Shown: piece by piece, positions 3,001-29,768 of the stretch | Position numbering within the stretch: the stretch's first letter is position 1 | How the letters are laid out: the number at the start of each line of letters is the position of its first letter | Assembly: GCA_977030845.1 (NCBI GenBank) | Contig: OZ365111.1 | Span: 21,266,001 to 21,330,000 of the forward strand | Source of the DNA: Fimbriosthenelais zetlandica | Lineage: Eukaryota | DNA: 64,000 bases | Direction: 5' to 3' | Position numbers and translations under genes: made by a program | The notes under the pieces: generated by a model | The model's database searches: none | Told to the model about the DNA's origin: nothing | What the model saw: the letters and a program-made list of their open reading frames with translations, nothing else

Positions 3001-6000
3001 TACAGGAAGATATCTACTTTATAAGGTAATCTAATTTAAAGTTTGCATGTGGGAATAATGATTATTTTTCATGGTGACTCCGGGATTTACGATAATAGAA
3101 TAGCAATTTATTTAAAAATATATTCATCAAAGTGATATCCGTCACATCAAGCAGGTACATTTATAGCCCTGAAGAACCGATTAGAGCACGCGCAAGCCTG
3201 TCAAAGCCAGTAGATTATCAGCTATATTTCTTATATTTATATGTGATAGACATAACCCCTATCTTTAGAACTCTGAAAACAAACCTATAACTAATACAAG
3301 CCAAAACATAAACCCTGTCAAAATAATGCAGCGAAATCTTAACTCATGATCCCTGTTTCACTGGCTATTTTCTCAGGATGTTTCTCATTGGAGTTTTGGC
3401 GTTTCTGCACTTATGTTTCATATATGATTCTATTCCTGTCTGATTCTTTATGGAATTTGTTCCCCAAACCTGAATCTGATTTACAACATATGGCTGAAGG
3501 CAGCATTCCATATAGGAAGGCATATAACTTGGTTAACATCATAGTATGAACTCAGGGATCAGACATGGACCTATATACAGAGGCTCAACCTCCATGATTC
3601 ACGACTTACTGGTCATGAAGAAGGCATGCCTCCAGCCATAATTGCATACATATCTGCTGAACAACATGGAAGAACATGATAAAACACGTTTTTCACAAAT
3701 CACAATAGATCTTGATCAGCAAAGTAATTCTATCTAAGATCCTTCTCTTAAAGATTTATGCTCAGTATACAATGTCAAAATGGATAGGCCTACGTACTTC
3801 ACTTGTATATTTTATTGCGTATTAAAATGCAACTAGATATCTGCATCAAATGAAAGTACAAGTAGTGTGAAAGGAAATTTGCCTTCTACTGACCTAAAAT
3901 CAGGCCATTGATCCCATGCATAGGTCTGTGGGACATTTTGGATTTTGGACTTGACCTATATGTTTGGGTACCGCAAGGGGTATATGCCAGGCATGCTATA
4001 GTGCTATAGCCTACTCAATCTTTTAACATTGGGGAAATTGGGGAGAAAGGTTCACATGATAAGAACCCTTCCCTTTCCTCCCTTTTCCACAGGCCACGTG
4101 ACCGACCTATATATGTTCAGTGTCCCAGATAATTGGTCATTATCTGTGAGAAACATGAGGGGCTCAGAACTTCTCAAGGGAGAGCAATGCAATTCACGAT
4201 GCCCTACTTTAAGCTCGATTATCCGGTGACTTGTATCTACTGTAGGCTACTAGAAATGTATTAGACTCTAAAACTATGATATGTAATACAGGATATCTAA
4301 TGTTTATATGAAAATTCCCTCTTACAATTATCGTAATGTAACTAATGGATTGTCAGGCATAGGGACATCAACATCATGGGTAAACTTTCAAAATCATTTC
4401 ATGAACCTGTAACATTTTACTGGCTCTTGATCTCTCTTGGTTCAAGTGTGAAATTCTTGCATTTGATGTAATGGTGTTGGGACAAGAGATGGCTGACAAA
4501 TCTGTAGCTCTTAACAAGGTCTAAAACTGATTTATGACGATCCTAACATAGGTGAACAGCGTGTGTCCAAGGTTATGATCACTTATATGAAAAATGATGA
4601 ATTAGACAGAAGGGAAAGGTGGGGAGGCTACAAACTGCCAGGTACATCCTGCTACATGCCATTTACAATGGGCCATATGTATAACTACCAGTTCTAACCC
4701 CTCATTTCTTCATGTGTATAAAACAGTGAGACACTAGCATTTTATTTTGCAGTAGTTAATGGGGCACTTAGTCAATACACTCCTCTTTGCATTACTTGTC
4801 AAAATGTTTCAAGGAGTTCATAATTATGCATTCAATCAATAGACAAAAAAGCTCACCATCCTGTTGACTCATTTTATCACATAATTCAAAACGAATATTA
4901 CAGGTACCTAGCTCAACACCAGCACAATAATATTTCAATATTTTCATAAGCACCTCCTACCCGTTTGGAAAAAAATTACTAATAGTAATATTTCATATAT
5001 TGGGCTTTGGTCATTAGGTTATCTATAGATATATGTATATGGTTTTGATGTTAGATTCTGCGGGAATTTTCAAACATACCTGTCCCCCCTTGATCTCATC
5101 GTTATAAAAAAAAGATCATCCCTAGACTGACCTTTAAAAATTTAAAATGCCGGAAATTGTTGAATCAATGAAAGAATGAAGCAGTGACTGAGAGGGAGAT
5201 TATGGCATTCAGTGACACGTATTATCCAATGATAGGGAAACACGCACTGCTCTGCAGGGGTCTTAACAGACTGGCCTCTGGGAGAGGGGTGGAGTTATTG
5301 GCTTGAGTAATGCCAGCATCAAGTCACTTCCTCTCTGGAAGTTGTTGGCCAGACTTCAGACTGGGTGTATGTATGACAGGCGTCAGGTAAACAAACAGAC
5401 ACTTCCTCACAATCCTTCTCAAAACAAAGGGGTAATTTCTGTTTTGAGCTCTGATCATCTTTTATTCAATTTGGGAATGTACTCGGTAGGTTACAGTTAC
5501 TGAGTAAGTTACACTCTGGTCTGAGATATATAGACCTGATGAGGCTATAGCTCAGAGCTGAGAACTCTGAACTTTAGAAACTAAAGTAATGACTATATAA
5601 CTTGTAGAATGAAAGCTAAGAGCAGGTTATATGTCAAGGACACGTGAAAGTCTGCGTTAATTGCTAACATAAGCTCTGGCTTATACTTAGATCTTTTTAT
5701 GGACCCCCTGTCAAAGAAATGTGACTAAAGTTATGATAGTATTATCGCTAAATGACAGCATGTATTTGGCATCGTTGCAAATATGTTCCTCTCTAAAGTA
5801 CCACAGCAGGTTACATATTATGCAAATCATTCGAAAGAGTGAACTGTGAGAATTCATTCATTGTATTGTCCTTAAAACCAGAAAAATGTATTGCTTGCAC
5901 TTTCGAAAGTCTTACGAGAGCTCTATCCTAATTATTGGACCCAAAGGGCCATGTTAAAACCCCAATCTATCTTTATCAACTGCAATTACGGTGGATTTCC

Positions 6001-6472
6001 ACACATAATCCTCTGTTATAAATAACATTCTGAGACTTAGTCTAAGTATAGAATCTATCCCGGATTTAAACCTTACCATGGGTGTTATAACAAAATACCT
6101 CATGCTAAATAATTTTATGAAATATAATGACCTTTTCTACTTTTAGTCCAAAGCAATATTTCCTAAAGTACCGTACACAAAATACCTAAATATTGAATAT
6201 AATATTCAATCCAATTGATGAAAGTTTGAAATACATGCACGTAAATCAAAACATTAATTCGAGGGTTTAGCTTTAAAAAAGTATACTTACTCTCCTTTAT
6301 GTTTACTGGTGACTAGAAGAATAATGCCAGTAAACAGTAGTATGATTCCAATCCAGAAGAATGCACACATCACTCTCCTGGGCACAATCCAATCATGGTT
6401 ACTTTTACCATCAATAATGATAGTCATATCCTTGTCGGTGTATCGACCAAATTCATCAGGTTCTCGCGCCAT
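1..6472 (-). CDS. Two-transmembrane protein with a long Pro-rich C-terminal tail; 3'-partial (runs off the window)
   Basis: Exon 1 6472-6291 (aagATGG start; MAREPDEF...AFFWIGIILLFTGIILLVTSKHKG; donor GA|gtaagt, phase 2). Exon 2 1351-1228 (tacag|G VYQSWGAILLGLGFCLLLICLILCLHAYCVITITEEEPLNK|gtatgt). Exon 3 starts at 919 (tacag|RNIPPPQPSVV...) and I read it stop-free to base 1 (306 codons). All splice phases are compatible. A UTR acceptor lies at ~6536. Confidence 0.8.
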
Positions 6473-6599
6473 CTTGTCGCTGCTTGTTGCTTCAGCGGTT
6501 CAAGGTAATTTAAATCCTAGCTGCTGATCCCTAACTGTAAAATACTTTCCGGTTACAAAAGGACTACTATTTTGCTACATTTTGTCACTCAGTAGTGTT

Positions 6600-8100
6600 C
6601 TGACATTGGAAAGCATCCATTGTCAAGTCAAGTAGATCCCCCTGGAGACGACGTTAAGAAAGTGGTACATTCCTTTGTGGTCACCATTTTAGACCCAGTC
6701 CTCCTCCTACTTGAAGTAGGCTATAATCTCAGATTCCATGAAATATCAGAATTGTTTAGGCCTAATTGATTGCCTCAGCTGCAAACCCAAAGTAGTGAGG
6801 AAACGGCTTCAATTAGCAGCAATCCATCATTGATAGCGCCTTATCTTCCCCTTGACAGGTTTGCTGACCCCAAAGCCGTCGACCCTGGCTTTTGATCTTC
6901 AGATATTGAATCCTAGATGAAGGAGGTTAGATTCCTTGCAAGCTTGGATCCTTCAAACATCTTATATGATGATGACCTGTCTAATCTGGCTATAGGTGGG
7001 GTCTGGTGTTAAGAATCTGGGTGAAATCTGGCACTCGTTTCTCTAGCATCTTCGTGTAATCAGGCTGTCTGATCGTCGAGCTCTTTGGGTCATTTGGGGG
7101 CGGGTGATCACAGGTCATTACCACGTGTCCTGCATCAACACCTGCCTATAGACCTGCTGTCTATAGCAGTGGTGGAGGGATGTTGATTGAATTACTAGCA
7201 TTCCAGTCGTTCGTGGCAGGCATGCCACCTGTGGTTAATGGCGTCCAGAGTGCTCTGGAGAAACCCTGCACATATCTAGCACCTCTTAAAAACCCTCTAA
7301 ATTTGACTCCTCAGGCCCGTGATCCAAAGTCGGGGAGATGAATCCTGCCTTCAAGAACCCACATGTATCAACTCAACACCTGATTAATTTATGGCTAGAA
7401 ACTTGTGGATTCCATTAACTTTCGATGAGGCATCAGAGCTGTTCTCGATTACTGCTTGGTCCCAGCTGGCTATCTGGCTATAGATGAAACTCCGAGAGCA
7501 AAATTCAATAACATTTTTCCCAAGGAATGAAAAAGGTCTGAGCACCATGTAGCATATGTATTGATCACACTCTCCACTCCAGATGTTGTATACATGTACT
7601 ATGTTCCTCTCTGAGGATAGAGCCAGGTCAAAGTTAAGCCTTGTGTTTAAGTTCAAGCTTAATCCAAGACAAATCCAGGAGGGTTCCTAACTCCATGAAG
7701 CCAGAATATGTTTCCACATGCTACGGGAGATAACGAGTAATATTAGACGATAAGATTCCATAGAACACCTTTCTCTCTACTTTCATGCGATGGAATATGC
7801 CCAGAGAGCACTCGGCACACCCTGGAGCAGATGCCTATTATAGCTTGGGCTGTTACGATGCTCTGGAGTTGGGCCCAGTTGGTGGAGGAGGGCTGAGCTT
7901 GTTGAAGCAAGGGGGTGTTGGTGTTGGTGTGCTGGAGGAGGAATAGATGGAGGTAGTGGTGGTACACATTCACACACTCACCCCCACTAACCTGGAGCCT
8001 TTTACCCTCCTGGCTGGTGGAGATGGGTCTTACACAGTGGTGGTGGTGGTGGTGGTGGTGGAGAGGCCCACCCCATCATAAGTATATACTCCAGGTGAAA
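6600..8100 (-). mobile_element. Possible highly degenerate retroelement remnant (DIRS-like)
   Basis: More GC-rich than its flanks. Broken minus-strand frames give RVPDFTQIL and LLHLGFNI*RSK, faintly like DIRS reverse-transcriptase segments. There are many stops and no intact YxDD. Confidence 0.2.
8037..8061. repeat. (GGT)n microsatellite
   Basis: gtggtggtggtggtggtggtggtgg seen directly. Confidence 0.9.
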
Positions 8101-8452
8101 AATCATACAGAAATATATGGACCTTCCATAGCAAAGCTCGAAAGCAACTAAGTTGCAAGGTAGGGAAGAAGTGTACACTACACAATGTTGTGTATACTAC
8201 AACTAATCATTATTGTTGTCACCCCAAAGAACATTTTTGTGAGTTATAGCCCCCAAGTCCAGTGAGTATATATATGTCGAGGATAGGACAAAAGAGTAGA
8301 GAAGATGAGTTTTCAGACTTGTACAAACTATGGACAGTTTAGTCACTCATTCATAGATTTAGTACTGACGTACATACAGTATGTGCTCACTTCTCCAGTG
8401 CAAGAATAATGAGGAGTCCATGACCAACACCCCAAGATTCCCGCCTCTAACT

Positions 8453-8506
8453 ACCCTATAGGCTATACCCCATACTTTGACCCTATAGGCTATACCCCAT
8501 ACCTTG
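8453..8506. repeat. 27-bp tandem direct repeat, two copies
   Basis: accctataggctataccccatactttg followed by accctataggctataccccataccttg. Confidence 0.9.
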
Positions 8507-10012
8507 AGCTACTCGTAGATCTACATCTTCACCACTGGCAGTTAGAACATTGAGATCCAAAGGTGAAAGGAGAGTATGGGAAGCCGAATGAAAAATTATA
8601 TTTTAAAGCCCTCTATTGTATCTGAGGATACAAATGAAAATGTCTCAGGTCTTGCAATAATACAATGACAATGCTACACATAATATAATCTTTATTCATA
8701 ACAAATTGAGATTCATAGCATAAAAGAAAAATTAGTCGGTGATTGTGGAGTAAAATGAGATTATATTTCAACGCTTTAAGAAAGTGAAGGACGAAGGACC
8801 AACTGAGGTAAATTCATAGCATACCCCTGTTCACATAGAGGTCAAATTTAAGGCACTCCTTAAAATGTTATTAATTCAATAATAAATAATGTTTTAAAAG
8901 GGAAATTCAGGAAAATACCAAAGAGTACAATTGATTATATAATGATTTCTATTATCCCAGAATACAATCCTGGCTCCTTACCTACATAACAATTTTCATG
9001 GGACCACTGTTGTGACACTAAAGTAAACCAAAAGAAATAACTTAGAATCTAAGTACATGTAACTAACAACTTTTAAAAGGCGTGGAAGGTAATAATTAAA
9101 GACTTTCATCTATCAATACATGATAGTGAAACAGAAAATTGATATACAATTACACACAATCTCACTTCTATGCTGCAAAAATATGTCATTCAGACAATAC
9201 GAATGAGCCTTAAAATATGTTGCAGAGCACGAGGTCTGCACTCATAATCTTTCTAATCTTGTATCACACAAAATATTGTGATATTAGTATATCACGCATT
9301 AGTATATTATATATTCTTATATAACATCTTATAAATAATAAATGAATGGATGAACGGTGGGTTAACACATTCCCAGCTTAGAAATATCTTTGGGACTTGT
9401 ACATATATAGTCATATCACACCGGGGACTCCCATTCCTCGCATTGAAAATATCACAATACTAAGGGAGGACTACAACCATAATCTATTCCAAAGTACAGG
9501 CGAAAAATAATAAATTCTAATAATCAGGGAGCACACCAAAACCCGGAAATAAGAGATTTCTTGTGTGATATCCCACATATATATATATACCAGTAATGGT
9601 CAGGCTTCAGATTAGTTAGATCAACAATTTTTCGGAATATAACTTGTTATTATTTCATGGTCATCCTTATGACCATGAAATAATATCAGGTCACTGAAAG
9701 TCTGAGCTACAATAATCTTGTCCACTGAGAAGTGTCATTCTATTAACGAAGGGTAAAAGAAAGCAAGTACCGGTATCGAAAGAACATTAGGACTTCTGGG
9801 TGTGAACATGGTTTGAAAAGAAGGAAATATTTGTGACTCTCAATGGAGGTAACACTTGAATTAAGGATTCAGATAAGATTTGAGAGTACCGAGATCGAGT
9901 GGTGTCCAATGAAATTTCAACATAAATTTCCAAGCACTTTGTGAAGGCCAAATTCAACATTTATCCGATAGTTACTAGTATATACACGTATTTGCAGCAT
10001 CTTGCAAAAATA

Positions 10013-11151
10013 TTAAAACTTACAAGCAAAAATGACACCCAGTGGATCACACTGACAGCTTTTAAGACTGGGATACTTCTCAAGTACTGGATCCATTTCC
10101 CTGTGGAAGAAGCAGAAGTGTTCTTCCCTGAGCCGGAATTTCAGGGCAGCTTCTCGATTCATTTCAACAAGATCTTCTAACAGTAAGTAGTTCTGGAGTC
10201 TGTGGGGTAAACCAAGCTGTGAGACTTTGGTATGGGGTCTGGGTTTCAGGTTTTGGATGATTGAATGGCGACAAAGATGCTGCAATGGGCGTGGTGAAGA
10301 GGAATTCCACAATAGGGACTGGTAAAGTTCATGAGGCAGGGTAGAGGGTTTGTCCCTTGCTGTCTGCAACAGTTCTAGTACCGAAGGCTCATTGGTGAAA
10401 TAAGGAATATATTCAATCAGGATAGATGCTATGGATGTGAGAAGTTTGCGTTTCTGCACTGACACGTATGGATTGCAGCAGTCCTGAAGAGCTATTTGTA
10501 AGGCAGTGGTGCCATTTTCATCAGGGATAGAGGGGTTGGAACCGGCTTTCAGGAGGGACAAAGTCAAACACACCAGACCTCCAGTTGCACATTGTCGGAG
10601 GGGCGTAGAACCGGTGTCAGCATAGCGAAAGTCAACACCAGCCCCATATTCCAAAAGAGTCTGTATCATATCTGAATGAGCTTGGTGGAGTTCAAATAAC
10701 CTTTCCTCTCTTTGTTGCATGAACTGCCACCGTTGGCATGTGGTTGCTGCAACCGTTCTGGTGACCATTGTGCAGTAATAGACACACCAGAATAGAACCG
10801 GTTTGTTGTCCACCCGGATGCCTTGATCGAGAAGGTACTTAAGGATATGCTGTTTGTCAGTCCTAAGAGCAAGGTTTATGTCTACATTCGGTTTGATTTC
10901 CATAAGAAAAGACAGTGTAGAGAGGTCAGCATTGGAGACTGCCAAATTGGCAGCTTTCTCAAGGATTTCATCATTGGTAACATAAGGCATGAGGACTTGC
11001 ACAGCCGCAGTGTTGTTGTAATACACAGCATTCCGTAAGACATTCTTGTTGGGTCTCTCCAAATTGTTGACAGGGTACCCTGCTTCAACCAGCTTAGAGA
11101 TGATTTTCTTTCTTCCCATTAATTGGATGGCAAGATCCATTGCTGTATTAC
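10013..11151 (-). CDS. ASB-like terminal exon C (ankyrin repeats + SOCS box + CQC tail)
   Basis: Phase-1 acceptor tttctgtttcatccag|GT AAT ACA GCA ATG gives SASGNTAMDLA, an ankyrin-type motif. Contains GSTPLRQC, GTTALQIAL and the SOCS box PRPLQHLCRHSIIQNL...LGLPHRLQNYLLL. Confidence 0.85.
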
Positions 11152-14100
11152 CTGGATGAAACAGAAATAAATATGATAACTACCAATGAATGATGGTTTC
11201 CATCTGTTGAATTAGATTTTAATCTAAACATTACCATATAGGCTTGCATTGCTTTTTAGTACACCGAATTGGGGGTTTTCGTTGTCTGTTGCTTCACATT
11301 CAGGTGGATTATGTGACCATAATCTACTGTACTAAAGTGGATAGAACCCTCAAGTCAAGCTTCACTCGTCCGGGCTCTATCCATTATTAAAGTATTATTA
11401 GGCTAAGGAGACAAATGAAACAACAAACCTTTCCATGCACATTCTAAGTAAAAAAGGGGAAACACGGGCAAGTTTCTGGAACATAGTTTCGGCCACCTAT
11501 CTTGGAAGCTGCAGAAAACCTACCAGCCATTAGGCATACGGCTCGATCCTGACTTTGCAAATCAGATAGGGCTATATATTCTCTCAATTGGGTTGGTATG
11601 TGTAAATTGGGATGACCATGTCTCAGAAATTGAGGTTTATAATGCTGAATGATGGTCAATCTACATAAGTGCTGTAGACTGCAGACATTCTTCGACCTAT
11701 ATAGAATTAAGTCTATCAGCTGGCGAGTACACTCTCGTAAGGTTTCAGGTTGGCGATGAGGGTCATTCACAGTCTCCTGGGCACAGAGTCTCGCCACAGA
11801 TCTGGGAATGGACTTACAAAATGAGCAAAGGATGAAGGCAGAACGAAGGAATTTCCGTCGCAAGCCACTCGAGCGATAAGTGTGCGAGATTGCCGTATAA
11901 ACGAGGTTTTCCATTTTTACCACATCAAGTTTTCTGTAGATGTATATTCCGCAGCCGTACCGGAGGAAATCCAAGAGCAAACATATGAGAGTGTGGGAGG
12001 CAGCTTGCATGAAAGGAGAAAGCTTTGCAACAATCATTGTGTTAATTTCCAGCCCATTTTGCACTAGTATCCAAAGGCCTTTCCTGAAGTAATTATGTAA
12101 AATTTGTCCTCTATTGCGGCTAGTGACATGAGCAAGAGATTCCCATCTCAAGAAAGGATATGTCGATACCACAGCAGAACTGGTAAAACACTGAATGACT
12201 ATCTCCCTGAATGGGTTATTGGTGCTATAGATGCTGAAATGTCCTTTCTTTGCAAGGTACTCCAAAGTAAAGAACTTTCCACAGCGGCATTCCCGGATGG
12301 CAGCCAATATGAGGTTGTTTCTACGATCGTATTTTTCCAGTACCTGAAGGAATGCGAGATCCTCTGACAAGACACAGTAAGAAAGTAAGTCTTGTACTTG
12401 TTCAGGGCTTTGCATAAAGCAGAGAAGAGTTGCTGGGAGAGTTGGGCGCCTTTTTATGGTTTTTGGGCCTTCACTTGGACTTGTGAGGGATGAAGGAACA
12501 GCTGATTCAGTGCCAGAAGTTTCTTCTAGAGCACGTCCATCTGAAAGGAAGACAACAAAAGAGTAGTCCCAGCCTCCCAGGCCTCCATGACCAGCTTCCT
12601 ACCAGCGCCTCCATCTCATATATTGTCGATTAATTTTTAATAATTCGATAGGTATTATTCTGAAAAATCTTAATAAAAAACTACTTTGGAGAGATTTCTT
12701 TCGGAGAGAGATATTTTAAAGATATTTCCATTTTCTAAAGATTCCAATATCAAAGTCCTTTAAATTGGGATAATATGCCATTTGAAAGAAGATATAATTT
12801 TATTAGGTGTCAAATATTTTATTGCCTGATGAAAGTATTAGAGAAATTAGTTCAGTAAAAGTAATGAATTTCCACAAGACTTATCTAAATTCAAACGCCC
12901 TTAATATAAAATTTGGTTATAAAATCAGTCACTCCAGAAAGGTAACACGAGATTTTGGAAAGTTGAGAGATTATTGCTTATAATTTATATATCATATAAA
13001 CAGTTAAAATATAAATACAGTTTATTATGATATAGTATTGGAATATAATTAAGGGTATACCTTATGGGTTGAGGTTTGAAAGAGTTGGGTGTGTATGTGA
13101 AGTTGTTGCAAACTGTTAATTTATCCCAACTACTCTTCCACTAGAATGAAAATGTTTTAAATATTGAAGAATAAACTTCAGAAAATTGTGACGCTCTCTA
13201 AAAAATTGTCATTGTGAGATTGTCTCTGACTTAGTGAAGAGAATCTAAATATAATATGGTCATTACAGGTTGGGACTACATAAACAGAGACACTGACTAT
13301 GACTGGGTGTAAGATTATTTTGGTGCACTCGTCTATTAATATCATAACATAAATCTTCCAAGTCTTGAAGGAGTATGTATTCCTTCAGCCTCGTAGGTAA
13401 AGGCAATTGATGCACTTTCTTATGAGCATTCAGTTTGAGAGATCTCAGCACTGCGATCCTACACAGATGACTGAGTTTATTTGGATTGCTCGACTTGTTG
13501 ATCAACAGGCACCGCAGTTCATTTATCACAGTTTTCATTTCAGGGGACAGATTGACAGCAGTTTCTAGATGCTGGGTTTTCTTCAGGTAGAGATCTACCG
13601 CAGGATCGTTGAGACTTGGCAGGTAGTTTATCCACAGGTAGGTCACTTTAATCATGTTGATGTTGAGAAAATAGGCAAACATGCCATTCAGGGCAGCAGC
13701 AAGCGGCGTTCTATTGTCCGGGATACGCTTTGGATCCACCCCGGCACGGAGCATCCAGAAAACGACACAAACCATGGATATTTTGGTGGCAAAGAACAAA
13801 GGAGACATCTGTGTGTCATGTCCCCTTTGATAGATATCTATCCCATTATCGAGCAAAATCTGGACTTTGTGTTCCGTTTCTATGTGCATCGCATGATGCA
13901 ATTGTCCCTTGGTCCTTGCTTTGTATCCGCCCACCTTCCAGCACTGTTGTATGCATTCGTACACTAATGAAAGGCCTTCTTCTATGGCTTCTTGACTCGT
14001 TGAGTGTCGCATGACGAGGGCTAGAACCCTTGAATCGCCATGTCTTACAATGAAACCCATGCTTAGGAGGAAGCCATGTTCCTTGATTAGAAACTGGAGG

Positions 14101-16474
14101 CATTTTAATGAACTCCATTCCACCGCCACCTCTTGCATTTCCTGTTGTGAATCAATGGCAGTGACATGCCAGATCATGGAAGAAAGGAATGGCAGGTCGT
14201 CTACCTTGAGGGCGGGCAGGAGGACTGAGATCAAGATATGCTGGGTAGGTTGATTGTACCCAGCTTTATACAGTCTTTGTAGCATGCATAGGCGTTTATC
14301 ATAGACACAAGCCAATACTGCATGCATCACTGTCATCCCTGGAAGTCGAAAAGAAATGGAGTGTGTGTTAGTATGGCTGCTCCTGTTGGGTTGTCCATGG
14401 TATATAATGGCTATAGACTTCAAATGCCTGGCATATCTTCTTTAATAGGAATTGCTGAATGTTTATGCTTATCACAGCTCTGTTGACACATCAATACACT
14501 ATTATGGAAAGGTCTCTAGATGCAGCTTCTTCCCTCACGGGGTTTCTACTGAGTAGGGAACTGCCAACTAAGGAAAGGTCTCTTTCTGCAGTCTCATGCC
14601 TCGTGGGTTATTGAATGAGTAGGGTAATGACTCATTCATACTCTAAAGGAAGGACTTTTTCTGCAGTTTTCTGCCTCGTGGGTTATTGAAGGAAAAGGGC
14701 AATGAACCTTGAGGTTTCAATGAAGAAATCCGAGCCGGTCTAAGTGAGACTAGCCACAGAAGACCCTACTAAAATCAGAGGTTTTCTTTGGTTACTCAAT
14801 TGGATACCGGTAGGCATAGCTATCGTATAAGGCCCCCTTAAGATAGGTTTTGTATATTGCCCAGTGCCCAGTGAGCCTATAATATTTTCATTCCATGAAT
14901 GGTCAAGTATACGCTTCACCAATGCAAGTCTTTGGCAATAACAGTATAATGAAAAATAGACCTACACTTCCAAGAAGGAATTTTAAGAGTTAGTATATAA
15001 GTACCTTAAAAACTGTAGAAAAACAAAGGTAAAAGTAACAGACACATGTTATGAAATTTTGCTTGATTATATTGCCCGCTTTTTATGTGTGCCATTGTGT
15101 TAACTTGTGGAGAAAAAAAATACCCAAAATGACTGTACATTTTTAGAAGAGGAAATGTAAAAATTAGTAGATTAAGAAACTCACAAATCTTTTACTTATT
15201 TCTGTTATTGCTAATTAACATAGGGAAAACTGAGTTGCAGTCTTACCGCTTGCAGATTTAGCATGTACATCCACTCCACATTCTAGTAATTTGTCTAAAC
15301 ATTCAACATCGCCATCTCTGACTGCATGTAAGATGGGCAGGTCACCCTCACCATCTGAAAGATAGGAGAAGACAACTCAATTCATTGCCAGGTTTAAAAT
15401 TCCTAAATTGAACCTAAAATGCAACGAGCATTTTGATCCAGAAGAAACATCATAATGACCCTGGTACACTAAAATCTTGTACAGTGAAAACTTTGCGGAT
15501 TGAGACAAAAACATTTTGGGAATTGAGACAAAAATGTTCACTATATGGGGGGTGTTGCCGAATCAGACTTAACTTACTTGGTCTGTTGAAATCACAGTTG
15601 TGCTCATTGAGTAGAGGCAGTAGATCATACTGGTTATATCTGACGGCTACATAGACAGCACCATCCTGATAGACGTTCAGGGGTTGGTGGAAGGCCCCAT
15701 TGCTCAGCAACCAGTTCACCATGTCCGCCTGGCCACACTTGATGGCCCAGAAGAGGGGAGTGGTAGCTTCATAATCTGACGTGGCCCAGTTTATAGAATC
15801 CGCTGGTTTGCTCACAAACTCTTGTAGGACTTTAAGGGCACCTGCGGGGGAAAAAAGTTTTTTTTAAATATATTTTTAAAAATCTTGTATCGAAAGTTAG
15901 GGTGTTTGAAAATCAGAAAATGTATGAGCTTTAAGGAAGTTAGGCCATAGTTGACCACAAGGCCAAGATATACTGATTTTTTCCCGATTTCTTTCCTAGT
16001 TTTTCTAACAAATCTCCAAATAGATGATCAATAATACATTTTAGAACATGATGGGATTTAATTCATTTTTAGAAGTGCTAATAAAAAGGTCACTTACCAT
16101 GCTCTGCAGCCAGATGAAGAATAGGTTTGTCAGCGTACTTTTGGAGCAGATCAGGAATTTCCACCAGAAGATGCTTAAACATAGACACGTCATCTGATTT
16201 CAAAGCTTGCTGGATTCTGAAAGCACAAAAACGTAATTAAGTAAATTATATTAAAATTTAGACCTGCAGATCTATCTATAGAATTGAATTTTATTAGCTC
16301 TATATGAATTACCAAGTAGTGATTAATCATTCACCTATTCTGTATTTCTTCCGCCTTCCTTTCCTCTTCAGTAGGAACTTTCTCAGGAAATTCCTCCTCA
16401 TCTCGAAGGAAACATGTGGACAATATATCTTCAGCATCTCCAAAATGCACGAGTGGTCGTTTGTCAGGATCCAT
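10013..16474 (-). CDS. Ankyrin repeat and SOCS box (ASB-like) gene with four shared exons and three candidate alternative terminal exons
   Basis: Shared exons: 16474-16335 (MDPDKRPLVH...), 16216-16098 (...KPILHLAAEHG), 15841-15578 (...TTPLFWAIKCGQADMVNWLLSNGA...) and 15354-15247 (NGEGDLPILHAVRDGDVECLDKLLECGVDVHAKSASG|gtaag). All are GT-AG with matching phases, and the last donor is phase 1. Ankyrin motifs run across the junctions. Confidence 0.85.
11444..12540 (-). CDS. ASB-like terminal exon B (no clear ankyrin repeat; SOCS box + CPC tail)
   Basis: Phase-1 acceptor ttgttgtcttcctttcag|AT GGA CGT. The frame is open for 125 nt up to the tracked ATG at 12415, with an in-frame stop upstream of the acceptor. 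SOCS box CSLQHLCRLTIIQHY...LHIPTQLREYIAL. ATTAAA on the minus strand at 11223-11218. Confidence 0.7.
13263..14338 (-). CDS. ASB-like terminal exon A (ankyrin-like repeats + SOCS box + CLCLC tail)
   Basis: Phase-1 acceptor tttcttttcgacttccag|GG ATG ACA GTG (junction reads SASG-MTVMHAV). Contains SPLFFAT, TPLAAAL and the SOCS box PNKLSHLCRIAVLRSL...LPLPTRLKEYILL. Stop at 13263; AATAAA on the minus strand at 13026-13021. Confidence 0.75.
14570..14697. repeat. Imperfect ~75-bp tandem duplication in the ASB-like variable intron
   Basis: aaggaa..g..ct.tttctgcagt.t..tgcctcgtgggttattgaa occurs at ~14570 and again at ~14646. Confidence 0.75.
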
Positions 16475-17170: not shown

Positions 17171-17607
17171 GGCGCGTCTATCCAAAGTCGACACTTTTCC
17201 CAGAGGGAAAGCAACTTCACACTCAAGCGCCATTGAATATATCTCCATTATAATTTGTTTTTTTTAAATGCATACACTTTACATACGCACACTTATGTAG
17301 GTTAATGTTTAATTTTTATTTGATGTAATAAAGAGTGTACATCATAGGCCTAGGTTTCACGGTAGCCTCACATAAATTAATATTTAAAAACAAACATAGC
17401 CATAGGCCTAGAGTCCAAGAGTACCGGTCGGTATCTAGCATTAATACGATATGGCAGATACGGGAAATGCACAATTTCCATGCAAATAAGCTGACCAGTA
17501 TATATAGCTAGAAGGTTTCCTTTGATTGCTAGAAATCTCCGGTGTACAGTATCCATCACGACTTTACTTCAGCGCCAAACTTTTAACTAACTGTAAGGGA
17601 CTGCCTC

Positions 17608-20600
17608 TCAGCTAAGTTTTATTGTTTTAGCTTTGACTTTATGTTGACCCGGAACACGGCGACCACGAAAATCCCCGACTAAATCTTCAATATCCTTGAT
17701 TTCTTCTCTTCCACTATCTTCCCTATCACTCGCCAAATTATTTTCCTGAAAAATACCATACCCTTGAGTCAGGCTTCTACTGTTTTTTGAATAAAGATTT
17801 TTAATTACAGAAATAGAAACAACCCAAAATGTATGCCTACATTAGGCCAAAGTACTAAATGATTTACAATTCAGCCCGTTTCAAAACTAAAATTAGCCAT
17901 AGGCTTAACATGGTAAAGGTACCACTTTGTAGGATTAAGAAATGGCCTGATTTTATCTACTGGTAGGGATAGGAGTAAGATGTAGAAACTTACTGATTTT
18001 CCTGTTTCTGTACAGCACGTGGGTTTACTGCATTGACAACTTTTCTTTTTGCCTTCTGACTGAGCTGTAAAAAGCTCTATAGCAGCCTGCCAAAATTCTT
18101 TTTTCCACGCCATGAAATCTTTTTCTTGACCTGAAAAAACAAGAAACGATTTTATAAATATGAACAATGCTCTCCAATCATAAGTAATATAGAAAATGTA
18201 CTTCAATTCACTGCAAAAATCTAGTAAACCGACCTACCTCCTCCACTAATTTCTGAAATATTTTCATCCAATATCCCAACAGGTAATAGTCGATGGTTAG
18301 CACCAAGTATTTCTAATGAAGTGTCGATTGTCATTGCAACCTAGAAAAATCAATGAAAACATAGATGAATGCAAATGCCAGGATTCAATGCTAAACTAGG
18401 CATAATGTTACCAGTAATCATTAATAATCCCATTTCCCCTGCCAGACTTAGCTTTAAAAATCCACTAAGCCATTATAATATCATCATGACATACCCGGGA
18501 AAGTTTTACAAGACAGTCTCACACCTCAATCATTAACCTCGTTAAATCAGGCAGCGTTCATCTTTAGAGATCAAGTATTCATTTGCATTACCAAGAATTC
18601 TCATGATTCATATAGAATATAATTATAGAATTAATTCATCGGAATAGACTGAAGGTAATTATGTACCTCCTGTCCAGGTCGCCAATTACAATCAGCCTAA
18701 AACCTGTGTATATAACAAAGACCCTCTGTGAGAGAAAGATGTGTATTGAGAGGCAGACTGAAAATCATAGATGAGTACCAAAAAACATACTTAAAACCTG
18801 AATATTTACTTAAAAACTTAATATATAAATCCATCGTTTCCTAATGCCTGTTACTCTATGTTAAAATAATCTTTGAAATTTAAATATTTCAAAAATTCCC
18901 TTTTTGACATAAGTCCTCATGCAAGGACTAAGTGCTTTCCAAACATAGAAAAAGTAAAATCTTTAGTTCTAGGCCCATAGACACCAACTCAACACCTAAA
19001 TCCATCTTTTTGTAATTCCTATTCCACTATGTGTAAAGTGAACATTTTCAAACTTCTTTCTAGACTCTTGTCTCTAAGCAAGGAAACTCTAGTACTGGTC
19101 CTTAACTCCTGTCACAACACAGCCTCCTAGCCCTCTATTCAAATTCTCCAGTCCTGCAACCACCCACCATGCAGTCAGCCCTGTTGCCATAGCAACTGTA
19201 GAGGGTAGACCCCCTAGACTTGACCACAACTGCTTGGCCACACCACTAACCATACTCACACCCACTCACCAGGCACCCACCAGTTTCCCCCCTAGACTTG
19301 ACAACAAACCCCTTGGCTATATATAATTCTTTTGAATAATCACTTATTGTGTCAAAGTAATCAATTTCAGGCTAATGTTTTTAAATATGAGAGAACAAAA
19401 CTAAACTCTGGATAGGTATTACAAATTGTAGATTCAGATATTCTCTATTTTATACTTAACTTAATTCTCTCAGTGCCAGGAGGCATATAAGTTTCACTGT
19501 TACATGTGGACTCAAATGCTTCAATTACAGAGATGTGTCATTGCTTTCATTAAAAAGAAGCTGAACATTTAATTTTGCAATCGATCTTCTCATTGAATAG
19601 AGGCCATTGTTATGATTGACCAGCAGAGTTATTCATTGAATAGTTCAAATAAAAAATAGGCTTAATGAAAGAAAGGCTTAGGCAAGTCCACTAATCCTTA
19701 GCCCCTCCAAGTGAGCAGTGGAGGGCGGGGGGCTGCTGCAGGTGCTACCTTGACCTTCATGTTTTAAATATTGTGTATTGTAGGCATTAGAAAAAACAAT
19801 GACTGGAATGCATAATGCAATACATGTATGCAAAGGTCTATTTATGTGCTTCAATCTATCTAAGTCATACTAAGCTCTATCTTTAAAAATAAACTTGACA
19901 GAGTGAAAAAAGCATGAAAATATTGACCAATATGGAAAATATTAAAAAATTCATAACAAATCAACTTATGAGTGGAATGCATAATGCAATATAGGTATCA
20001 ACAGGTCTTTTTATGTACTTTCATTTATTTAATTCATTCCAAGCTCTATCTTTTAAAGTAAACTTGCTGGATTGAATAAACTGAAAATATTGGGTCAATT
20101 ACTTTTTACATCATTGTTTCATCATGTTTTGTCATGAAAATAAACAAAAAGAAATGACCACCTTATAAATAACAGCCAAGGGTAACTCATGTACTAAGTG
20201 TTTTTTTCTCAGAATAAAAACCAGGAAGGAGATCGATTTTAAGTGATTTCATCCCCCTGACCTAATTCCACGTAAATAATTAGGTCAAAGGTCAAATATG
20301 TAGGTCAACTTATGGTCCATCATGTATCTTTACACTACATACCATTCATCTTATTCTAGATCCTCATGGGTCAAAAAAAAATTACAATCAAATTTTACCA
20401 ATTTGGCTGGTTTGGTGACGTCATGTGACGTCATGTGATGACGTATGACATCCATTCATCACATGTGACCACTTCTTACTATGGTCTACAATATGTGTGA
20501 AAACCAGATTCCTAGCTCTAATATAAACCCGTTTTTCATCAGTTGTCTAACTACAACAATAATAAAAAAAAAAAAAAAAATAAGTGTAGAACAACGAGCA

Positions 20601-23600
20601 CAAAATCTACAACCCCATTTTCCCCATAAAGGGGAAATGGGATTAATTTCCTCCACATTTTAACTCAAAACGGTGGCATTATCAATTTTATAATTATTAT
20701 ATAATTTCAAATATCGGAAGAAAGCTAAAAACGACGTAATAAATGAGTAATAAATACCTCGCAAAAGTCTTCCTGATATTGACTGTTCCCAATTCCAAGC
20801 ACTGTATACTCAAGCCCCTCCAACATGTTCCTGGGCAGGCGGGAATCATTGGCGCCCTCAAGTAGCCATTTATGGAACCAGACGGTATCATCAGGAGGGA
20901 TTCCATCGTTACAGGTGGCAATGATAAACACTATTAAGATTCCATTATTAATCTGCAAAACATTTTATATTGATAATTTTAAGCATTAGTTGAAAAATGG
21001 AATCATGTCGAAATATCTGATTGACCGAAGAAGGAACGTGATTAATTTTTAAAAGTGACAAATTCTGTACCTCTTGGGACAAACAATCCTCTGCATCGTA
21101 ATCTCTTATATTAACCATGGAAGACTTCAGATTCTGAATTCTTGCTTCTTCATCAAGAATAACGGCATATTTCTGTAAAGGTAAATAATTGAATCAAAGG
21201 CGTAGCCCAAAATAAACCATTCTTTTTTCTTCGAATCATGGATAATACAAAGGAATTGGTTCATGATAGGTGATGATTGTTATTCAAGCCCATTTCTTGT
21301 TTCCTTCTGGATTTTTTACCTATAAAACGAGGCGTTATAATAACATGAAACAATCTAACCTGAAATCGTAGCTTGCCTGTGCAGCTTCTGTTTCGGAGCC
21401 ATATACAATTTTGATACCGTTCAATCTCTTGCGTCGACTTCCAAAGCTGCTAACAATTCTCTGTTGGAATTAAGGGGAAATACATTTTCTTCAGCTGCAA
21501 GTACGGTATAAGTCAAATTCGGAAGAAATTACTTATATTCTTTAATTAATAATACAACGGAATATGACAAAATTCATTAAAGACTTTACTAGTCCTATAA
21601 TTCTATATTCACTCAAAATATATACATGTACGCGTTTCTCACCTGAAGGGTGAAGGGAAAAATATCTTATAATTATGTAGATGAGTTGAACGCCTACCTT
21701 GATGTATAATTTTGACTTTGGCTGTGTAATCAGCCAAGTTAAAACAAATCCAGTAGTTGCTAGGCTTAATACAGATATGGTGACGTGTTGTCTCATTTGT
21801 GATAGTAATTGACCAAATAAAGACAATCGACCTGGAAAAAAAACCGTTTTAGCATTTAAACTTTTTTGTCAGATAAGTCTAAATTAAAGATATATGTTCG
21901 CATTAGGTATTGTAGACTAGTCACTAATCTACCATCATCCATAGCCAGGACTTGTGGGGTGGGGATAATCCATTGGAGTTGGGTGTAGGGACCCCAGGAT
22001 ATTTTTTTTTTCAGGAATGCCAGTTTTTCTCTCAATCTCAGAGCCAACATTTGTCTCAAAATAGTTATTAATCCCATTTCCCCTTTATGGGGAAAATGGG
22101 GTTTTAGATTTTGTGCTCGTTGTTCTACACTATTATTTTTTTTTTAATGTTGTAGTTAGACTTTTGATGAAAAACGGGTTTATATTAGAGGTAGGAATCT
22201 GGTTTTCACACATATTGTAGACCATAGTAAGGAGTGGTCAAATGTGATGAATGGATGTCATACGTCATCACATGACGTCATATGACGTCACCAAACCAGC
22301 CAAATTGGTAAAATTTGATTGTAATTTTTTTGGACCCATGCGGATCTAGAATAAGATGAATGGTATGTAGTGTAAAGATACATGATGGACTATAAGTTGA
22401 CCTACATATTTGACCTTTGACCTAATTAGTTATGTGTAATTAGGTCAGGGGTATGAAATCTCTCAAATGCCATTTCTTCCCAATTAAAAAATGTTAGTAA
22501 TTGATTACACTTGGTTAATAAGAATCCTTTGGGTGGGGCGTATCTGAAAAATAGTTTTTGGTGAAGACCCATGTGACGTAAATGACGTCACATTGATGTA
22601 AAATCTAATTAACCCAATATTTTCAGTTTATTTAATCCAGCAAGTTTATTTTTAAAGACAAAGCTTAAAATGAATTAGATGAATTAAAGTACATAAAAAG
22701 ACCTGTTGATACCTATATTGCATAATGTATTCCACTTGTAAGTTGATTTGTTATAAATTTTTTAATATTTTCCATTTTGGTCAATATTTTCATGCTTTTT
22801 TCACTCTGGCAAGTTTATTTTTAAAGATAGAGCTTAGTATGAATTACAAAAAATGATGCACATAAATAGACCTTTGCATACATGTATTGCATTATGCAGT
22901 ACAGTAATTCTTTCTAATTCAGCTTTTGAATACACAAAAATTTAAGACAAGGTCAAGGTAGCACCTGCAGCACCCCCCCCCCCCCCCACCCCCCAACCCT
23001 CCACTCTCGTGGTCACTTGGATTAGTGAAGAGAGACTTGCCTAAGTCTTTCTTTCTTTAAGCCTATTTTTTATTAGAACTGTTCAGAGAATAACTCTGCT
23101 GGTCAATCATAACAATGGCATCTATTTTATGAGAAGATTGATTGCACAATGAAATGTTCAGCTTCTTTTTAATGAAAGCAATGACACATCTCTGGTAATT
23201 GAAGCATTTGAGTCCACATGTAACAGTGAAACTTATATGCCTCATGGCACTGAGAGAATTAAATTAAGTATAAGATAGAGAATATCTAAATCTACAATTT
23301 GTAATACCTATCAAGAGTTTAGTTTTGTTCTCTCATATTTAAAAACATTAGCCTGAAATTGATTACTTTGACACAATAAGTGATTATCCAAAAGAATTAT
23401 ATATAGCCAAGGGGTTTGTGGTCAAGTCTAGGGGGAGACCCTGACTGGTGTGACTTAGAGGTGTTGTGGTCAAGTCTAGGAGGAAACTCTGTTGTTGCCA
23501 TGGCAGCAGGTCAGGGTGCAAGACTGGAGGATTAGAATAGAGGGCTAGGAGGCTGTGTTGTTATAGCAGTTAAGTACCAGTACTTTGCTTAGAGACAAGA

Positions 23601-28300: not shown

Positions 28301-29768
28301 GATTTTATCAGATTCGGGTACAGAATCGGAATCAGGGAGTGGGAGTTCTTCTGAAAAACCAAGATTGAGAAATAAGGCTTCAGCAAAATCTAGACTGAAC
28401 ACTAGTGTAGCTTCCCGTAGTGCACGACGAACAACAAAATCTGCTAAATACAAAGAAGACTCTGATTCTGATAGCCCCTCAGATGAAGAACCACTGAAAA
28501 AGAAATCTAGAAAAAATACTCCAATGTCAAGCTCTGATAGTGATGAAGACATTCCCTTAAAACAAGTGAAGTCGAAGAAAAGCCCAAGTGTTAGCTCACC
28601 AAAGAAAAAACAAAGGAAGAAATGCAGGCCAAAATCTTCATCAGAAGAATCCGAAGAGGAAATGCCCTTGAAAAAAGTGAAATCTAAAAAAGAGTCAAAG
28701 TTAAAAAATAAGGCGATTTTATCAGATTCGGGTACAGAATCGGAATCAGGGAGTGGGAGTTCTTCTGAAAAACCAAGATTGAGAAATAAGGCTTCAGCAA
28801 AATCTAGACTGAACACTAGTGTAGCTTCCCGTAGTGGACGACGAACAACAAAATCTGCTAAATACAAAGAAGACTCTTATTCTGATAGCCCCTCAGACGA
28901 AGAACCACTGAAAAAGCTTAATCGCACTAAAAAGAAAACTATTTCTGAGGAATCTGACGAGGAACCAGAGCCTGAGGATTTGGGAAATGCTCATGGTTCT
29001 AGTGACACAGAGGAAGAAGTTCCGCTAAAACGATTGAAATCCAAGAAAGAATCTGAAGCTGAGGAACGCAAGAGGATGAAGGCCAGGCGAAGATCTTCAT
29101 CAGAAGAATCAGAAGAAGAAATGCCCTTGAAAAGGTTGAAATCTGAAAAAAAGACAAAGTCAAAAAGTAAGGTGATTGAATCAGACCCAGGTACAGAATC
29201 AGGGAGTGAGAATTCTTCTGAAAAAGCAAGATTGAGAAATAAGTCTACAGCAAAGTCTAGAATGAACACTAGTGTAGCTTCCCGTAGTGGTCGTCAAGCG
29301 ACAAAATCTATTAAATACGAAGACTCTGAGTCTGATAGCTCCTCAGATGAAGAACCACTGAAAAAGAAATCCGAAGTTAAAATACATTTGAAAAAATTAA
29401 AATCTCAAAAAGAATCAAAGTTAAAAAGTAAGGCGATTGAATCAGATCCGGCTACAGAATCAGAATCAGGGAGTGAGAGTTCTTCTGAAAAAGCCGCATT
29501 GAAAAATAAGTCTCCATCAAAATCCAGAATGAAAACCGGTGTAGCTTCCCGTAGTGGACGTCAAGTGACAAAATCTATTAAATACGAAGACTCGGAGTCT
29601 GATTGCTCCTCAGATGAACCATTGAATAATAAATCTAGAAAAAATACCCCATCATCAAGCTCTGATAGTGAGGAGGACATTCCCTTAAAACAAGTGAAGT
29701 CGAAGAAAAGCCCAGGTGTTAGTTCAACAAAGAAATGTCATGTCATCTTATATCGCGTAGATGTATAA
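25359..29768 (+). CDS. HIRIP3-like protein (~1140 aa): conserved N-terminal helical domain plus a very long Lys/Ser/Glu-rich repeat region
   Basis: Exons 25359-25405, 25619-25736, 26159-26263, 26415-26494 and 26684-29768 are all phase-compatible. The N-terminus MEKFVKNFIKSTDDLSTLTQRVIRDKY...QKIDLRAIAL resembles human HIRIP3 (EMQEFTRSFFRGRPDLSTLTHSIVRRRY, from memory). No C-terminal CHZ domain seen. Confidence 0.65.
27930..29740 (+). repeat. Coding tandem repeat with a 420-bp (140-aa) period; near-identical central copies and diverged flanking copies
   Basis: For example agaaatctag...actccaatgtcaagctctgatagtgatgaagacattccc recurs 420 bp apart (~28087 and ~28507). The RLRNK..AKSRLNTSVASRS block occurs five times in the translation. 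Confidence 0.9.

What the first reader, a model, noticed from the sequence alone, without database searches (positions are those of the whole stretch)
10013..15354. ASB-like gene with three interchangeable terminal exons, each carrying its own SOCS box
Seen in sequence: the shared ankyrin exons end at one phase-1 donor (15247, AGC G|gtaag). Downstream lie three ~1.1 kb open exons (14338-13263, 12540-11444, 11151-10013). Each has a polypyrimidine tract, a phase-1 AG, a SOCS box, a stop and a candidate poly(A) signal. Junctions A and C complete ankyrin-type motifs (SASG-MTVMHAV, SASG-NTAMDLA), and all three frames are closed by a stop shortly upstream of the acceptor. Established: ankyrin + SOCS box proteins recruit Elongin B/C-Cullin5 and select substrates through the ankyrin region. 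Inference: one promoter and one constant N-terminus are joined to one of three very divergent variable modules, giving a constant/variable E3-adaptor repertoire produced by tandem exon duplication. Isoform choice would be set by splicing and polyadenylation. I know of no ASB gene described with this architecture, but I could not search.
Basis: partly seen in the sequence, partly recalled or inferred. Interest (0 to 1): 0.92.

Follow-up and report, generated by a model that had tools for sequence, protein, structure and literature searches.

The report
ASB gene with three alternative end-exons
One ankyrin/SOCS-box ubiquitin-ligase adaptor gene carries three old, still-selected copies of its last exon, so it probably makes three different adaptors from one promoter; flies have genes built this way, but I found no ASB-family case in the papers searched, and no RNA data could be obtained to confirm it.

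Summary
On the minus strand, four constant coding exons (ATG 16474; exon 4 ends at a phase-1 donor, 15247) are followed by three about 1.1 kb open exons: A 14338-13263, B 12540-11444, C 11151-10013. Each has a pyrimidine tract, a phase-1 AG, a Pfam SOCS box and a stop. Joining gives clean proteins of 568, 575 and 589 aa.

New evidence comes from a related species (Logan contigs L003+L001). It has the same four exons and A-B-C in the same order. Synonymous sites are saturated (pS 0.75-0.79), yet pN/pS is 0.19-0.35 in all four parts. DNA similarity starts about 30 nt upstream of each acceptor and ends at each stop. The donor and acceptor phases are kept. Module B has 42 conserved codons before its first possible start codon, so it must take its reading frame from an upstream exon.

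No sequencing runs were listed, so no splice junction has been seen. Independent promoters for A or C are not excluded.

The design matches Drosophila pipe and PGRP-LC (duplicated alternative terminal exons) and resembles lola and mod(mdg4). Two paper searches found no ASB example.

The same scan holds untested first-reader notes of other alternative-terminal-exon arrays in this genome.

Confidence is 0.7 and interest is moderate.

The parts
16335..16474 (-). Constant coding exon 1. ATG at 16474-16472; the donor AG|gtgaat leaves phase 2. Acidic N-terminus, 46 codons plus 2 nt.
   Evidence: Sequence. The joined frame is open. A stop lies 4 codons upstream of the ATG. Conserved in the related species at L003 1357-1493.
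16098..16216 (-). Constant exon 2 (119 nt). Starts ankyrin repeat 1 and ends in phase 1 (CATG|gtaagt).
   Evidence: The related species has an exon of identical length, 119 nt.
15578..15841 (-). Constant exon 3 (264 nt, phase 1 to 1), ankyrin repeats.
   Evidence: Pfam Ank_2/Ank_3/Ank. 83-85% aa identity to the related species, same length.
15247..15354 (-). Constant exon 4 (108 nt, phase 1 to 1). It is exactly one ankyrin repeat. The donor GCG|gtaaga is the proposed shared donor.
   Evidence: The related species has a 108-nt exon with a phase-1 donor ACA|gtaagt.
14339..15246 (-). Intron between the shared donor and module A. It holds a TACTAAC branch-point-like motif about 30 nt before the AG, and 3-4 copies of a 63-75 nt repeat at 14502-14705.
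13263..14338 (-). Module A: terminal exon of 358 codons plus stop, with ankyrin-like repeats. SOCS box at 13371-13484.
   Evidence: Pfam SOCS_box 7e-12. 70% aa identity to the related species, pN/pS 0.25. The acceptor and 14 nt upstream are nearly identical in the related species.
13021..13026 (-). AATAAA, 237 nt after the stop of A: candidate poly(A) signal for isoform A.
   Evidence: The related species has AATAAA at +233.
11444..12540 (-). Module B: terminal exon of 365 codons plus stop. A Ser/Thr/Pro-rich linker of 42 codons has no in-frame ATG, GTG or TTG. It is followed by a diverged helical region and a SOCS box at 11573-11689.
   Evidence: Pfam SOCS_box 3e-8. Homologous to C (25% over 303 aa, E 6e-11). 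55% aa identity to the related species, pN/pS 0.35. The linker is conserved: z 4.4, 2 of 2000 shuffles reach the score.
11218..11223 (-). ATTAAA, the only canonical poly(A) hexamer in the 292-nt gap between B and C. It lies 72 nt before the acceptor of C.
   Evidence: The related species also has a single ATTAAA in its 210-nt gap, 63 nt before the acceptor of C.
10013..11151 (-). Module C: terminal exon of 379 codons plus stop, with clear ankyrin repeats. SOCS box at 10181-10297.
   Evidence: Pfam Ank_2 9e-12 and SOCS_box 5e-11. 68.5% aa identity to the related species, pN/pS 0.25. The three codons before the first ATG are kept, with two synonymous changes.
8691..8696 (-). First canonical AATAAA after module C (+1317 nt). 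It implies a long 3' UTR or a non-canonical signal for isoform C.

Best explanation
This is one ASB-type gene, encoding an ankyrin-repeat and SOCS-box substrate receptor of an Elongin B/C-Cullin 5 ubiquitin ligase. It has four constant coding exons (about 210 aa, four ankyrin repeats) and three alternative last exons that arose by old tandem duplications of the terminal exon. The phase-1 donor of exon 4 would be spliced to the acceptor of A, B or C. The phase-1 donors of exons 2 and 3 would also fit. The predicted proteins are 568, 575 and 589 aa. They share the N-terminal repeats and differ in the remaining repeat region, the SOCS box and the tail. Which isoform is made would depend on competition between the three 3' splice sites and the poly(A) sites after A and B.

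Shown here: the exons, their phases, open frames and domains; purifying selection on every part; and conservation of the whole layout in a second species.

Inferred: that all three junctions are used in mRNA, how the choice is regulated, and that the products bind Elongin B/C and Cullin 5.
For: (1) Joining the constant exons to each module gives a frame with only the terminal stop.
(2) The related species (L003 joined to L001 by a 24-nt overlap) has exons 1-4 with the same lengths (exon 1: 137 vs 140 nt) and phases, then A, B and C in the same order.
(3) Between the two species pS is 0.75-0.79, which is saturated. pN/pS is 0.19 for the constant part, 0.25 for A, 0.35 for B and 0.25 for C. All three modules are therefore selected coding sequence.
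(4) DNA similarity begins 27-33 nt upstream of each acceptor AG and ends at each stop. Nothing else in the gaps aligns. That is the footprint of a 3' splice site.
(5) The last base of exon 4 differs between the species (G vs A), yet all three junction codons stay sense: G/D/G vs R/N/K.
(6) Module B has 42 codons between its acceptor and its first in-frame ATG, GTG or TTG. They stay open in both species, with indels that are multiples of three, and they are conserved. B therefore needs an upstream coding exon.
(7) The codons N-T-A before the first ATG of C are kept through two synonymous changes.
(8) The junction falls at an ankyrin repeat boundary, and A and C continue the repeat.
(9) The gaps between modules are only 722 and 292 nt and hold no copy of the constant exons.
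(10) Ortholog pairs group with 100/99 support, so the triplication predates the split of the two species.
(11) A decayed fourth copy in the related species includes the acceptor region. The duplicated unit is therefore the exon together with its 3' splice site.
Against: No transcript evidence of any kind was obtained. No runs were listed, and no spliced full-length protein appeared in three protein searches. A and C each have an in-frame ATG within 5 codons of the acceptor, with a purine at -3, so independent translation from a separate transcript is possible for them. C has no canonical poly(A) hexamer within 1.3 kb. Module B breaks the ankyrin repeat at its junction. No competing RNA pairing between the shared intron and the regions upstream of the acceptors stood out from shuffled sequence.
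Confidence: 0.7

Rival explanations
1. This is a cluster of separate genes. The constant exons plus A form one gene. B and/or C, or all three modules, are transcribed from their own promoters in the gaps. They would be translated from internal ATGs into short ASB proteins of about 323-375 aa. The conserved AG would then serve only a private untranslated leader exon, or have no function.
For: Each module has an in-frame ATG near its start: codon 2 or 5 in A, codon 5 in C, codon 43 in B. The prokaryote-style gene calls on the related contigs treat them as separate ORFs. Short ASB proteins with six or seven ankyrin repeats exist in vertebrates (my own knowledge).
Against: The 42 codons of B upstream of its first start codon are open, conserved and free of frame-shifting indels in both species. 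All three acceptors keep phase 1, matching the one upstream donor phase, in both species. The B-C gap is only 292 nt here and 210 nt in the relative, and it must also hold B's 3' UTR and poly(A) signal. No conserved block that could be a private first exon was found in any gap.
Confidence: 0.17
2. Trans-splicing as in mod(mdg4). Each module would be transcribed on its own pre-mRNA from its own promoter, and its acceptor would be joined in trans to the donor of the constant exons.
For: [quoted passage not shown] The layout here is compatible: conserved acceptors, one donor phase, all on the same strand.
Against: Nothing here requires it. All modules lie downstream of the donor on the same strand and within 5.3 kb, so ordinary cis-splicing suffices. 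No conserved intronic motifs were seen outside the splice-site footprints.
Confidence: 0.03
3. Only one module is a working terminal exon. The other two are relics of duplication that are never included in mRNA.
For: Decayed copies do occur. The related species has a fourth partial copy of C with an 11-nt deletion and a stop.
Against: A, B and C are only 22-26% identical to each other, so they are old. Yet each keeps an open frame of 358-379 codons in two species whose synonymous sites are saturated, with pN/pS 0.25-0.35. Relics would have lost their frames, as the fourth copy did.
Confidence: 0.03

Closest known systems
Drosophila PGRP-LC, pipe (pip) and CG42235: tandemly duplicated, mutually exclusive 3' variable regions or terminal exons (reviewed in PMC9013439)
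   Same: A constant 5' part is joined to one of several homologous terminal exons or exon groups lying in tandem on the same strand. Each encodes a whole domain with its own stop and 3' end. They arose by tandem exon duplication.
   Different: Those genes encode a peptidoglycan receptor and a sulfotransferase, not a ubiquitin-ligase receptor. Their choice of exon is reported to depend on competing RNA structures, which I could not detect here. Their isoforms are shown by RNA data, and these are not.
Drosophila lola and mod(mdg4): a constant BTB N-terminus with many alternative 3' exons (PMC13490949 for mod(mdg4))
   Same: One promoter and a constant N-terminal protein part are combined with one of several alternative C-terminal modules carried by 3' exons.
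   Different: There the constant part is the oligomerisation/adaptor domain (BTB) and the variable part is a zinc finger or FLYWCH domain. Here the ligase-docking element (the SOCS box) sits in every variable module. mod(mdg4) uses trans-splicing. Only three modules are present here.
Vertebrate ASB proteins (ASB1-18), receptors of Elongin B/C-Cullin 5 ligases (PMC3779351); ASB2 alpha/beta isoforms (PMC8042406)
   Same: Ankyrin repeats are followed by a C-terminal SOCS box with a BC box (L-x-x-x-C-x-x-x-[IV]) and a Cul5 box (L-P-x-P-like). The sizes of 568-589 aa are within the family's range.
   Different: No close ortholog was found. The best named hit is a crinoid 'ASB3-like' protein at about 37% identity over 17% of the query. 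I found no ASB gene reported with alternative terminal exons that each carry a SOCS box. From my own knowledge, the ASB2 isoforms differ at the N-terminus. These modules also carry a 40-60 aa tail after the SOCS box that ends in a shared C-x-C-x-P motif.

Membership tests
ASB (ankyrin repeat and SOCS box) proteins | Ankyrin repeats N-terminal to the SOCS box | tested here: met
   Pfam Ank families hit exon 3, module C (Ank_2 9e-12) and, weakly, module A. PDB hits of C are ankyrin or DARPin chains. Module B has no Pfam ankyrin hit but is homologous to A and C along its length.
ASB (ankyrin repeat and SOCS box) proteins | C-terminal SOCS box with a BC box and a Cul5 box | tested here: met
   Pfam SOCS_box is above the gathering score in all three modules: 45.8, 34.0 and 43.2 bits against a cut-off of 23.5. 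L-x-x-x-C-x-x-x-[IV] and L-[PGH]-[LI]-P-x-x-L-x-x-Y motifs are visible in alignment A4. The Cul5 box of window module B reads L-H-I-P, which is degenerate. Its ortholog reads L-P-L-P.
ASB (ankyrin repeat and SOCS box) proteins | Binds Elongin B/C and Cullin 5 and targets substrates for ubiquitination | not testable with these tools
   This needs co-immunoprecipitation or reconstitution. The structure models were too poor to use (pLDDT 39-40).
Tandemly duplicated alternative terminal exons (pipe / PGRP-LC type) | Homologous terminal exons in tandem on one strand, each with an acceptor, a stop and a 3' end signal | tested here: met
   The poly(A) hexamer is canonical after A and B. After C it appears only 1.3 kb downstream.
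Tandemly duplicated alternative terminal exons (pipe / PGRP-LC type) | One upstream donor whose phase fits all alternatives, conserved across species | tested here: met
   Phase-1 donor at 15247 and three phase-1 acceptors. The same holds in the related species although the donor's last base differs.
Tandemly duplicated alternative terminal exons (pipe / PGRP-LC type) | Each alternative is found, mutually exclusively, in mature mRNA | not testable with these tools
   The look-up of sequencing runs listed no run, so read laying could not be used. No spliced product was in the protein collections.
Tandemly duplicated alternative terminal exons (pipe / PGRP-LC type) | Competing RNA pairings (docking and selector sites) that direct the choice | tested here: inconclusive
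   Short complementary stretches exist, for example 15193-15206 with 11160-11173, but about as many are expected by chance. Duplex energies between the intron start and the 200 nt before each acceptor did not differ from shuffles in the window (z +0.2 to -0.8). Only one of three pairs did in the relative (z -2.4).
mod(mdg4)-type trans-spliced loci | Variable 3' exons transcribed separately and joined in trans | not testable with these tools
   This needs 5'-end mapping and nascent RNA data.

The most novel reading that the evidence does not exclude
This would be a conserved locus with one promoter and three receptors for a Cullin-5 ligase. Alternative last exons would swap most of the substrate-binding ankyrin surface together with the SOCS box and a Cys-rich tail, while four N-terminal repeats stay constant. 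Modules would be gained and lost over time: the related species has a decayed fourth copy, and a third unknown eukaryote has three near-identical tandem modules. On this reading, ubiquitin-ligase receptor diversity in this lineage is generated the way flies diversify PGRP-LC.
Probability: 0.6. Interest if true: 0.6.

Novelty: new variant of a known kind. Interest (0 to 1): 0.5.

Why it matters
If the three junctions are used, one transcription unit yields three ligase receptors. They would share an N-terminal ankyrin platform and differ in the rest of the binding surface and in the ligase-docking box. Receptor choice would then be a splicing and polyadenylation decision rather than a transcriptional one. 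That would be a compact natural system for two questions: which part of an ASB protein sets substrate choice, and how proximal and distal last exons compete when they are as little as 292 nt apart. It would also add an E3-ligase example to the short list of genes diversified by duplicated terminal exons. The general principle is already established in Drosophila, so the interest is moderate.

Tried and rejected
(1) RNA evidence. Two sequencing-run runs (module C alone; the 6-kb locus, any kind) listed no run, so read laying could not be used.

(2) Spliced proteins in public collections. Searches with C, with A and with a six-module profile found only ORF-level calls on genomic contigs of one relative, plus generic ankyrin proteins. 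I could not search with the spliced isoforms, because they have no reference and I did not type long sequences.

(3) Representative search with exon 3. It was swamped by giant multi-ankyrin proteins. The only specific hit was a 110-aa exon-3 ORF on a 536-bp marine metagenome contig (L004).

(4) Metagenome scan with an exon-3 alignment. The best locus, L005, has a 45% identical exon 3 but no recognisable exon 4 or module within 3.3 kb.

(5) Structure prediction of modules A and B from two-sequence alignments. Mean pLDDT was 40 and 39, so no fold search was run.

(6) Docking/selector RNA pairing. The signal was not above chance. A first version of that script timed out.

(7) L015, a tandem triple of ASB-like modules in a third eukaryote. 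I could not walk upstream to look for constant exons, because the neighbouring gene calls read through stops and are not accepted by reference.

(8) In the tree I gave one L015 row in the wrong frame. Only the window and related-species pairs are used from that tree.

(9) A hand-built nucleotide-identity comparison with free end gaps was badly designed and is ignored. The blastn footprints are used instead.

(10) The organism was not identified.
Full report
**1. What is in the sequence**

The minus strand of 10013-16474 holds a compact gene.

Each carries a Pfam SOCS box above the gathering score: A 7e-12, B 3e-8, C 5e-11. Ankyrin families hit C strongly and A weakly.
- Reading the DNA and joining exons in a script gave four constant coding exons: 16474-16335 (ATG at 16474, ends in phase 2), 16216-16098, 15841-15578 and 15354-15247. 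The last three all end in phase 1.
- Each of the three terminal exons starts after a pyrimidine tract and an AG, in phase 1: A 14338-13263, B 12540-11444, C 11151-10013.
- The constant part (210 codons plus one base) joined to A, B or C gives 568, 575 or 589 codons, each with a single terminal stop.
- The frame is closed 35, 20 and 10 codons upstream of the three junction codons.
- The modules are 22-26% identical to each other. B aligns with C over 303 residues. They are therefore old copies of one exon.
- The gene upstream (21.8-17.6 kb, same strand) has a flavodoxin domain and its own stop, so it is a separate gene.

**2. A second species has the same layout**

- Protein searches with C and with A each found one close relative, at 68% and 70% identity, on Logan contigs. 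L001 and L002 carry B and C. L003 carries four constant exons and A.
- L003 ends with the 24 bases that start L001. Joined, they give exons 1-4, then A, B and C in the same order on 11.6 kb.
- Exons 2, 3 and 4 have exactly the same lengths as in the window (119, 264 and 108 nt) and the same phases.
- The last base of exon 4 is A there instead of G. The three junction codons read R, N and K instead of G, D and G, and none is a stop.

**3. Selection**

- Codon alignments between the two species give pS of 0.75-0.79 in every part. Synonymous sites are saturated.
- pN is only 0.15-0.28. pN/pS is 0.19 for the constant part, 0.25 for A, 0.35 for B and 0.25 for C.
- All three modules are therefore working coding sequence, which disposes of the idea that two of them are relics.
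- For contrast, the related species has a fourth partial copy of C's acceptor and first 50 codons about 1.4 kb downstream of C. It already has an 11-nt deletion and a stop.
- In a tree, the A, B and C ortholog pairs each group with 100/99 support. The triplication is older than the split of the two species.

**4. Are the modules spliced exons or separate genes?**

Several results favour spliced exons.

- (a) DNA similarity between the species starts 27-33 nt upstream of each of the three AGs and stops at each stop codon. Nothing else in the introns or gaps aligns. That is what a branch point, pyrimidine tract and AG followed by coding sequence would leave.
- (b) Module B has no in-frame ATG, GTG or TTG for its first 42 codons. 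Yet this Ser/Thr/Pro-rich stretch is open in both species, differs by indels of whole codons, and aligns better than 1998 of 2000 shuffles. B cannot start its own translation there, so it must receive its frame from an upstream exon with a phase-1 donor.
- (c) In C, the three codons before the first ATG (N-T-A) are kept through two synonymous changes.
- (d) Exon 4 ends exactly at an ankyrin repeat boundary. A and C continue with G/x-x-T-x-M-H/D-x-A, as a next repeat should.
- (e) The gaps between modules are 722 and 292 nt (1506 and 210 nt in the relative) and hold no copy of the constant exons.

Against this, A and C do have an ATG within five codons of their acceptors. A private promoter for them cannot be ruled out from sequence.

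**5. 3' ends**

- AATAAA follows A at +237 nt, and at +233 nt in the relative.
- The short B-C gap holds a single ATTAAA in each species, 72 and 63 nt before C's acceptor.
- C has no canonical hexamer for 1317 nt in the window and 914 nt in the relative.
- The tight, conserved spacing means that B's cleavage site and C's branch-point region almost overlap. This would make the two choices compete directly. That is inference.

**6. What could not be tested**

- No sequencing run was listed for this DNA, so no junction has been seen.
- No spliced product was in the protein collections.
- Structure models of A and B were of low confidence.
- A search for competing RNA pairings of the kind reported for PGRP-LC gave nothing above chance.

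**7. Comparison with what is known**

- The products meet the sequence definition of ASB proteins: ankyrin repeats plus a SOCS box with BC and Cul5 boxes. [quoted passage not shown] No close named ortholog exists in the collections.
- The gene design is not new in principle. Drosophila pipe has eight clusters of mutually exclusive, tandemly duplicated terminal exons. PGRP-LC and CG42235 choose among 3' variable regions (PMC9013439). mod(mdg4) joins common exons to one of more than 30 variable 3' exons, in trans (PMC13490949).
- Two full-text searches combining 'SOCS box' with alternative last or terminal exons found no ASB case. A third, on ASB isoforms, found only the ASB2 isoforms.
- I therefore file it as a new variant: a known way of diversifying a protein, here applied to a Cullin-5 receptor, with the ligase-docking box repeated in every variable module.

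**8. Other leads**

- A profile of the six modules found a 1.86-Mb contig of a third, unidentified eukaryote (L015). It has three tandem ankyrin-SOCS modules in units of about 3.5 kb that are 77-90% identical. One module is intact, one is split and one is truncated. I could not reach the sequence upstream of that array.
- All modules share a C-x-C-x-P motif near the C-terminus.
- Earlier notes of this scan list other suspected alternative-terminal-exon arrays and other ankyrin-SOCS ORFs in the same genome. I did not test them.

**9. Verdict**

- The constant/variable reading is well supported by comparative evidence, but no transcript has shown it (confidence 0.7).
- It is a new variant of a known kind, of moderate interest (0.5).

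Noticed in passing
window 10013-10060, 11444-11475, 13263-13300; alignment A4: All six modules (A, B and C in two species) carry a 40-60 aa tail after the Cul5 box that ends in a shared C-x-C-x-P motif (CQCDP, CLCSP, CPCFP). The L015 modules also end with C-L-C. From my own knowledge, vertebrate ASB proteins lack such a tail. Its role is unknown; metal binding or lipidation are guesses.
   Followed up: no
L001 about 3990-4190 (related species, about 1.4 kb downstream of module C): A fourth, decayed copy of module C's acceptor region and first 50 or so codons, about 75% identical to that species' own C. An 11-nt deletion leads to a stop, and the contig ends soon after. The window has no counterpart downstream of C.
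   Followed up: partly
L015 2673-10792 (ENA ERZ26052378, contig ctg10296, 1.86 Mb): A third, unidentified eukaryote has three tandem ankyrin plus SOCS-box modules on one strand, in units of about 3.5 kb that are 77-90% identical. Module 2 is intact (395 aa), module 1 is split into two frames, and module 3 lacks its N-terminal part. Whether constant exons lie upstream could not be checked.
   Followed up: partly
window 14502-14705 (minus-strand intron between exon 4 and module A): Three adjacent copies of a 63-75 nt repeat (70-100% identical) sit just upstream of module A's acceptor region. A weaker fourth match (63%) lies inside module A at 13964-14026.
   Followed up: no
window 17611-21831, minus strand: The upstream neighbour has a flavodoxin domain (Pfam Flavodoxin_1, 8.5e-9, at 20728-20964). 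It ends at a stop near 17611, with an AATAAA near 17318, about 850 nt before the ASB start codon. I saw no radical SAM exons in 1-10000.
   Followed up: partly
window 26655-29765, plus strand: A 1037-codon open frame, very rich in Ser, Lys and Glu, with long internal repeats (repeated ...SKKSPxVSSPKKKQRKKCR... blocks). It has no Pfam family.
   Followed up: no
window 15578, 16098 and 15247 (donors of exons 3, 2 and 4): All three donors are phase 1, and exon 4 is a symmetric single-repeat exon of 108 nt. Skipping exon 4, or exons 3 and 4, would also join in frame to any module, so up to nine in-frame products are possible on paper.
   Followed up: no
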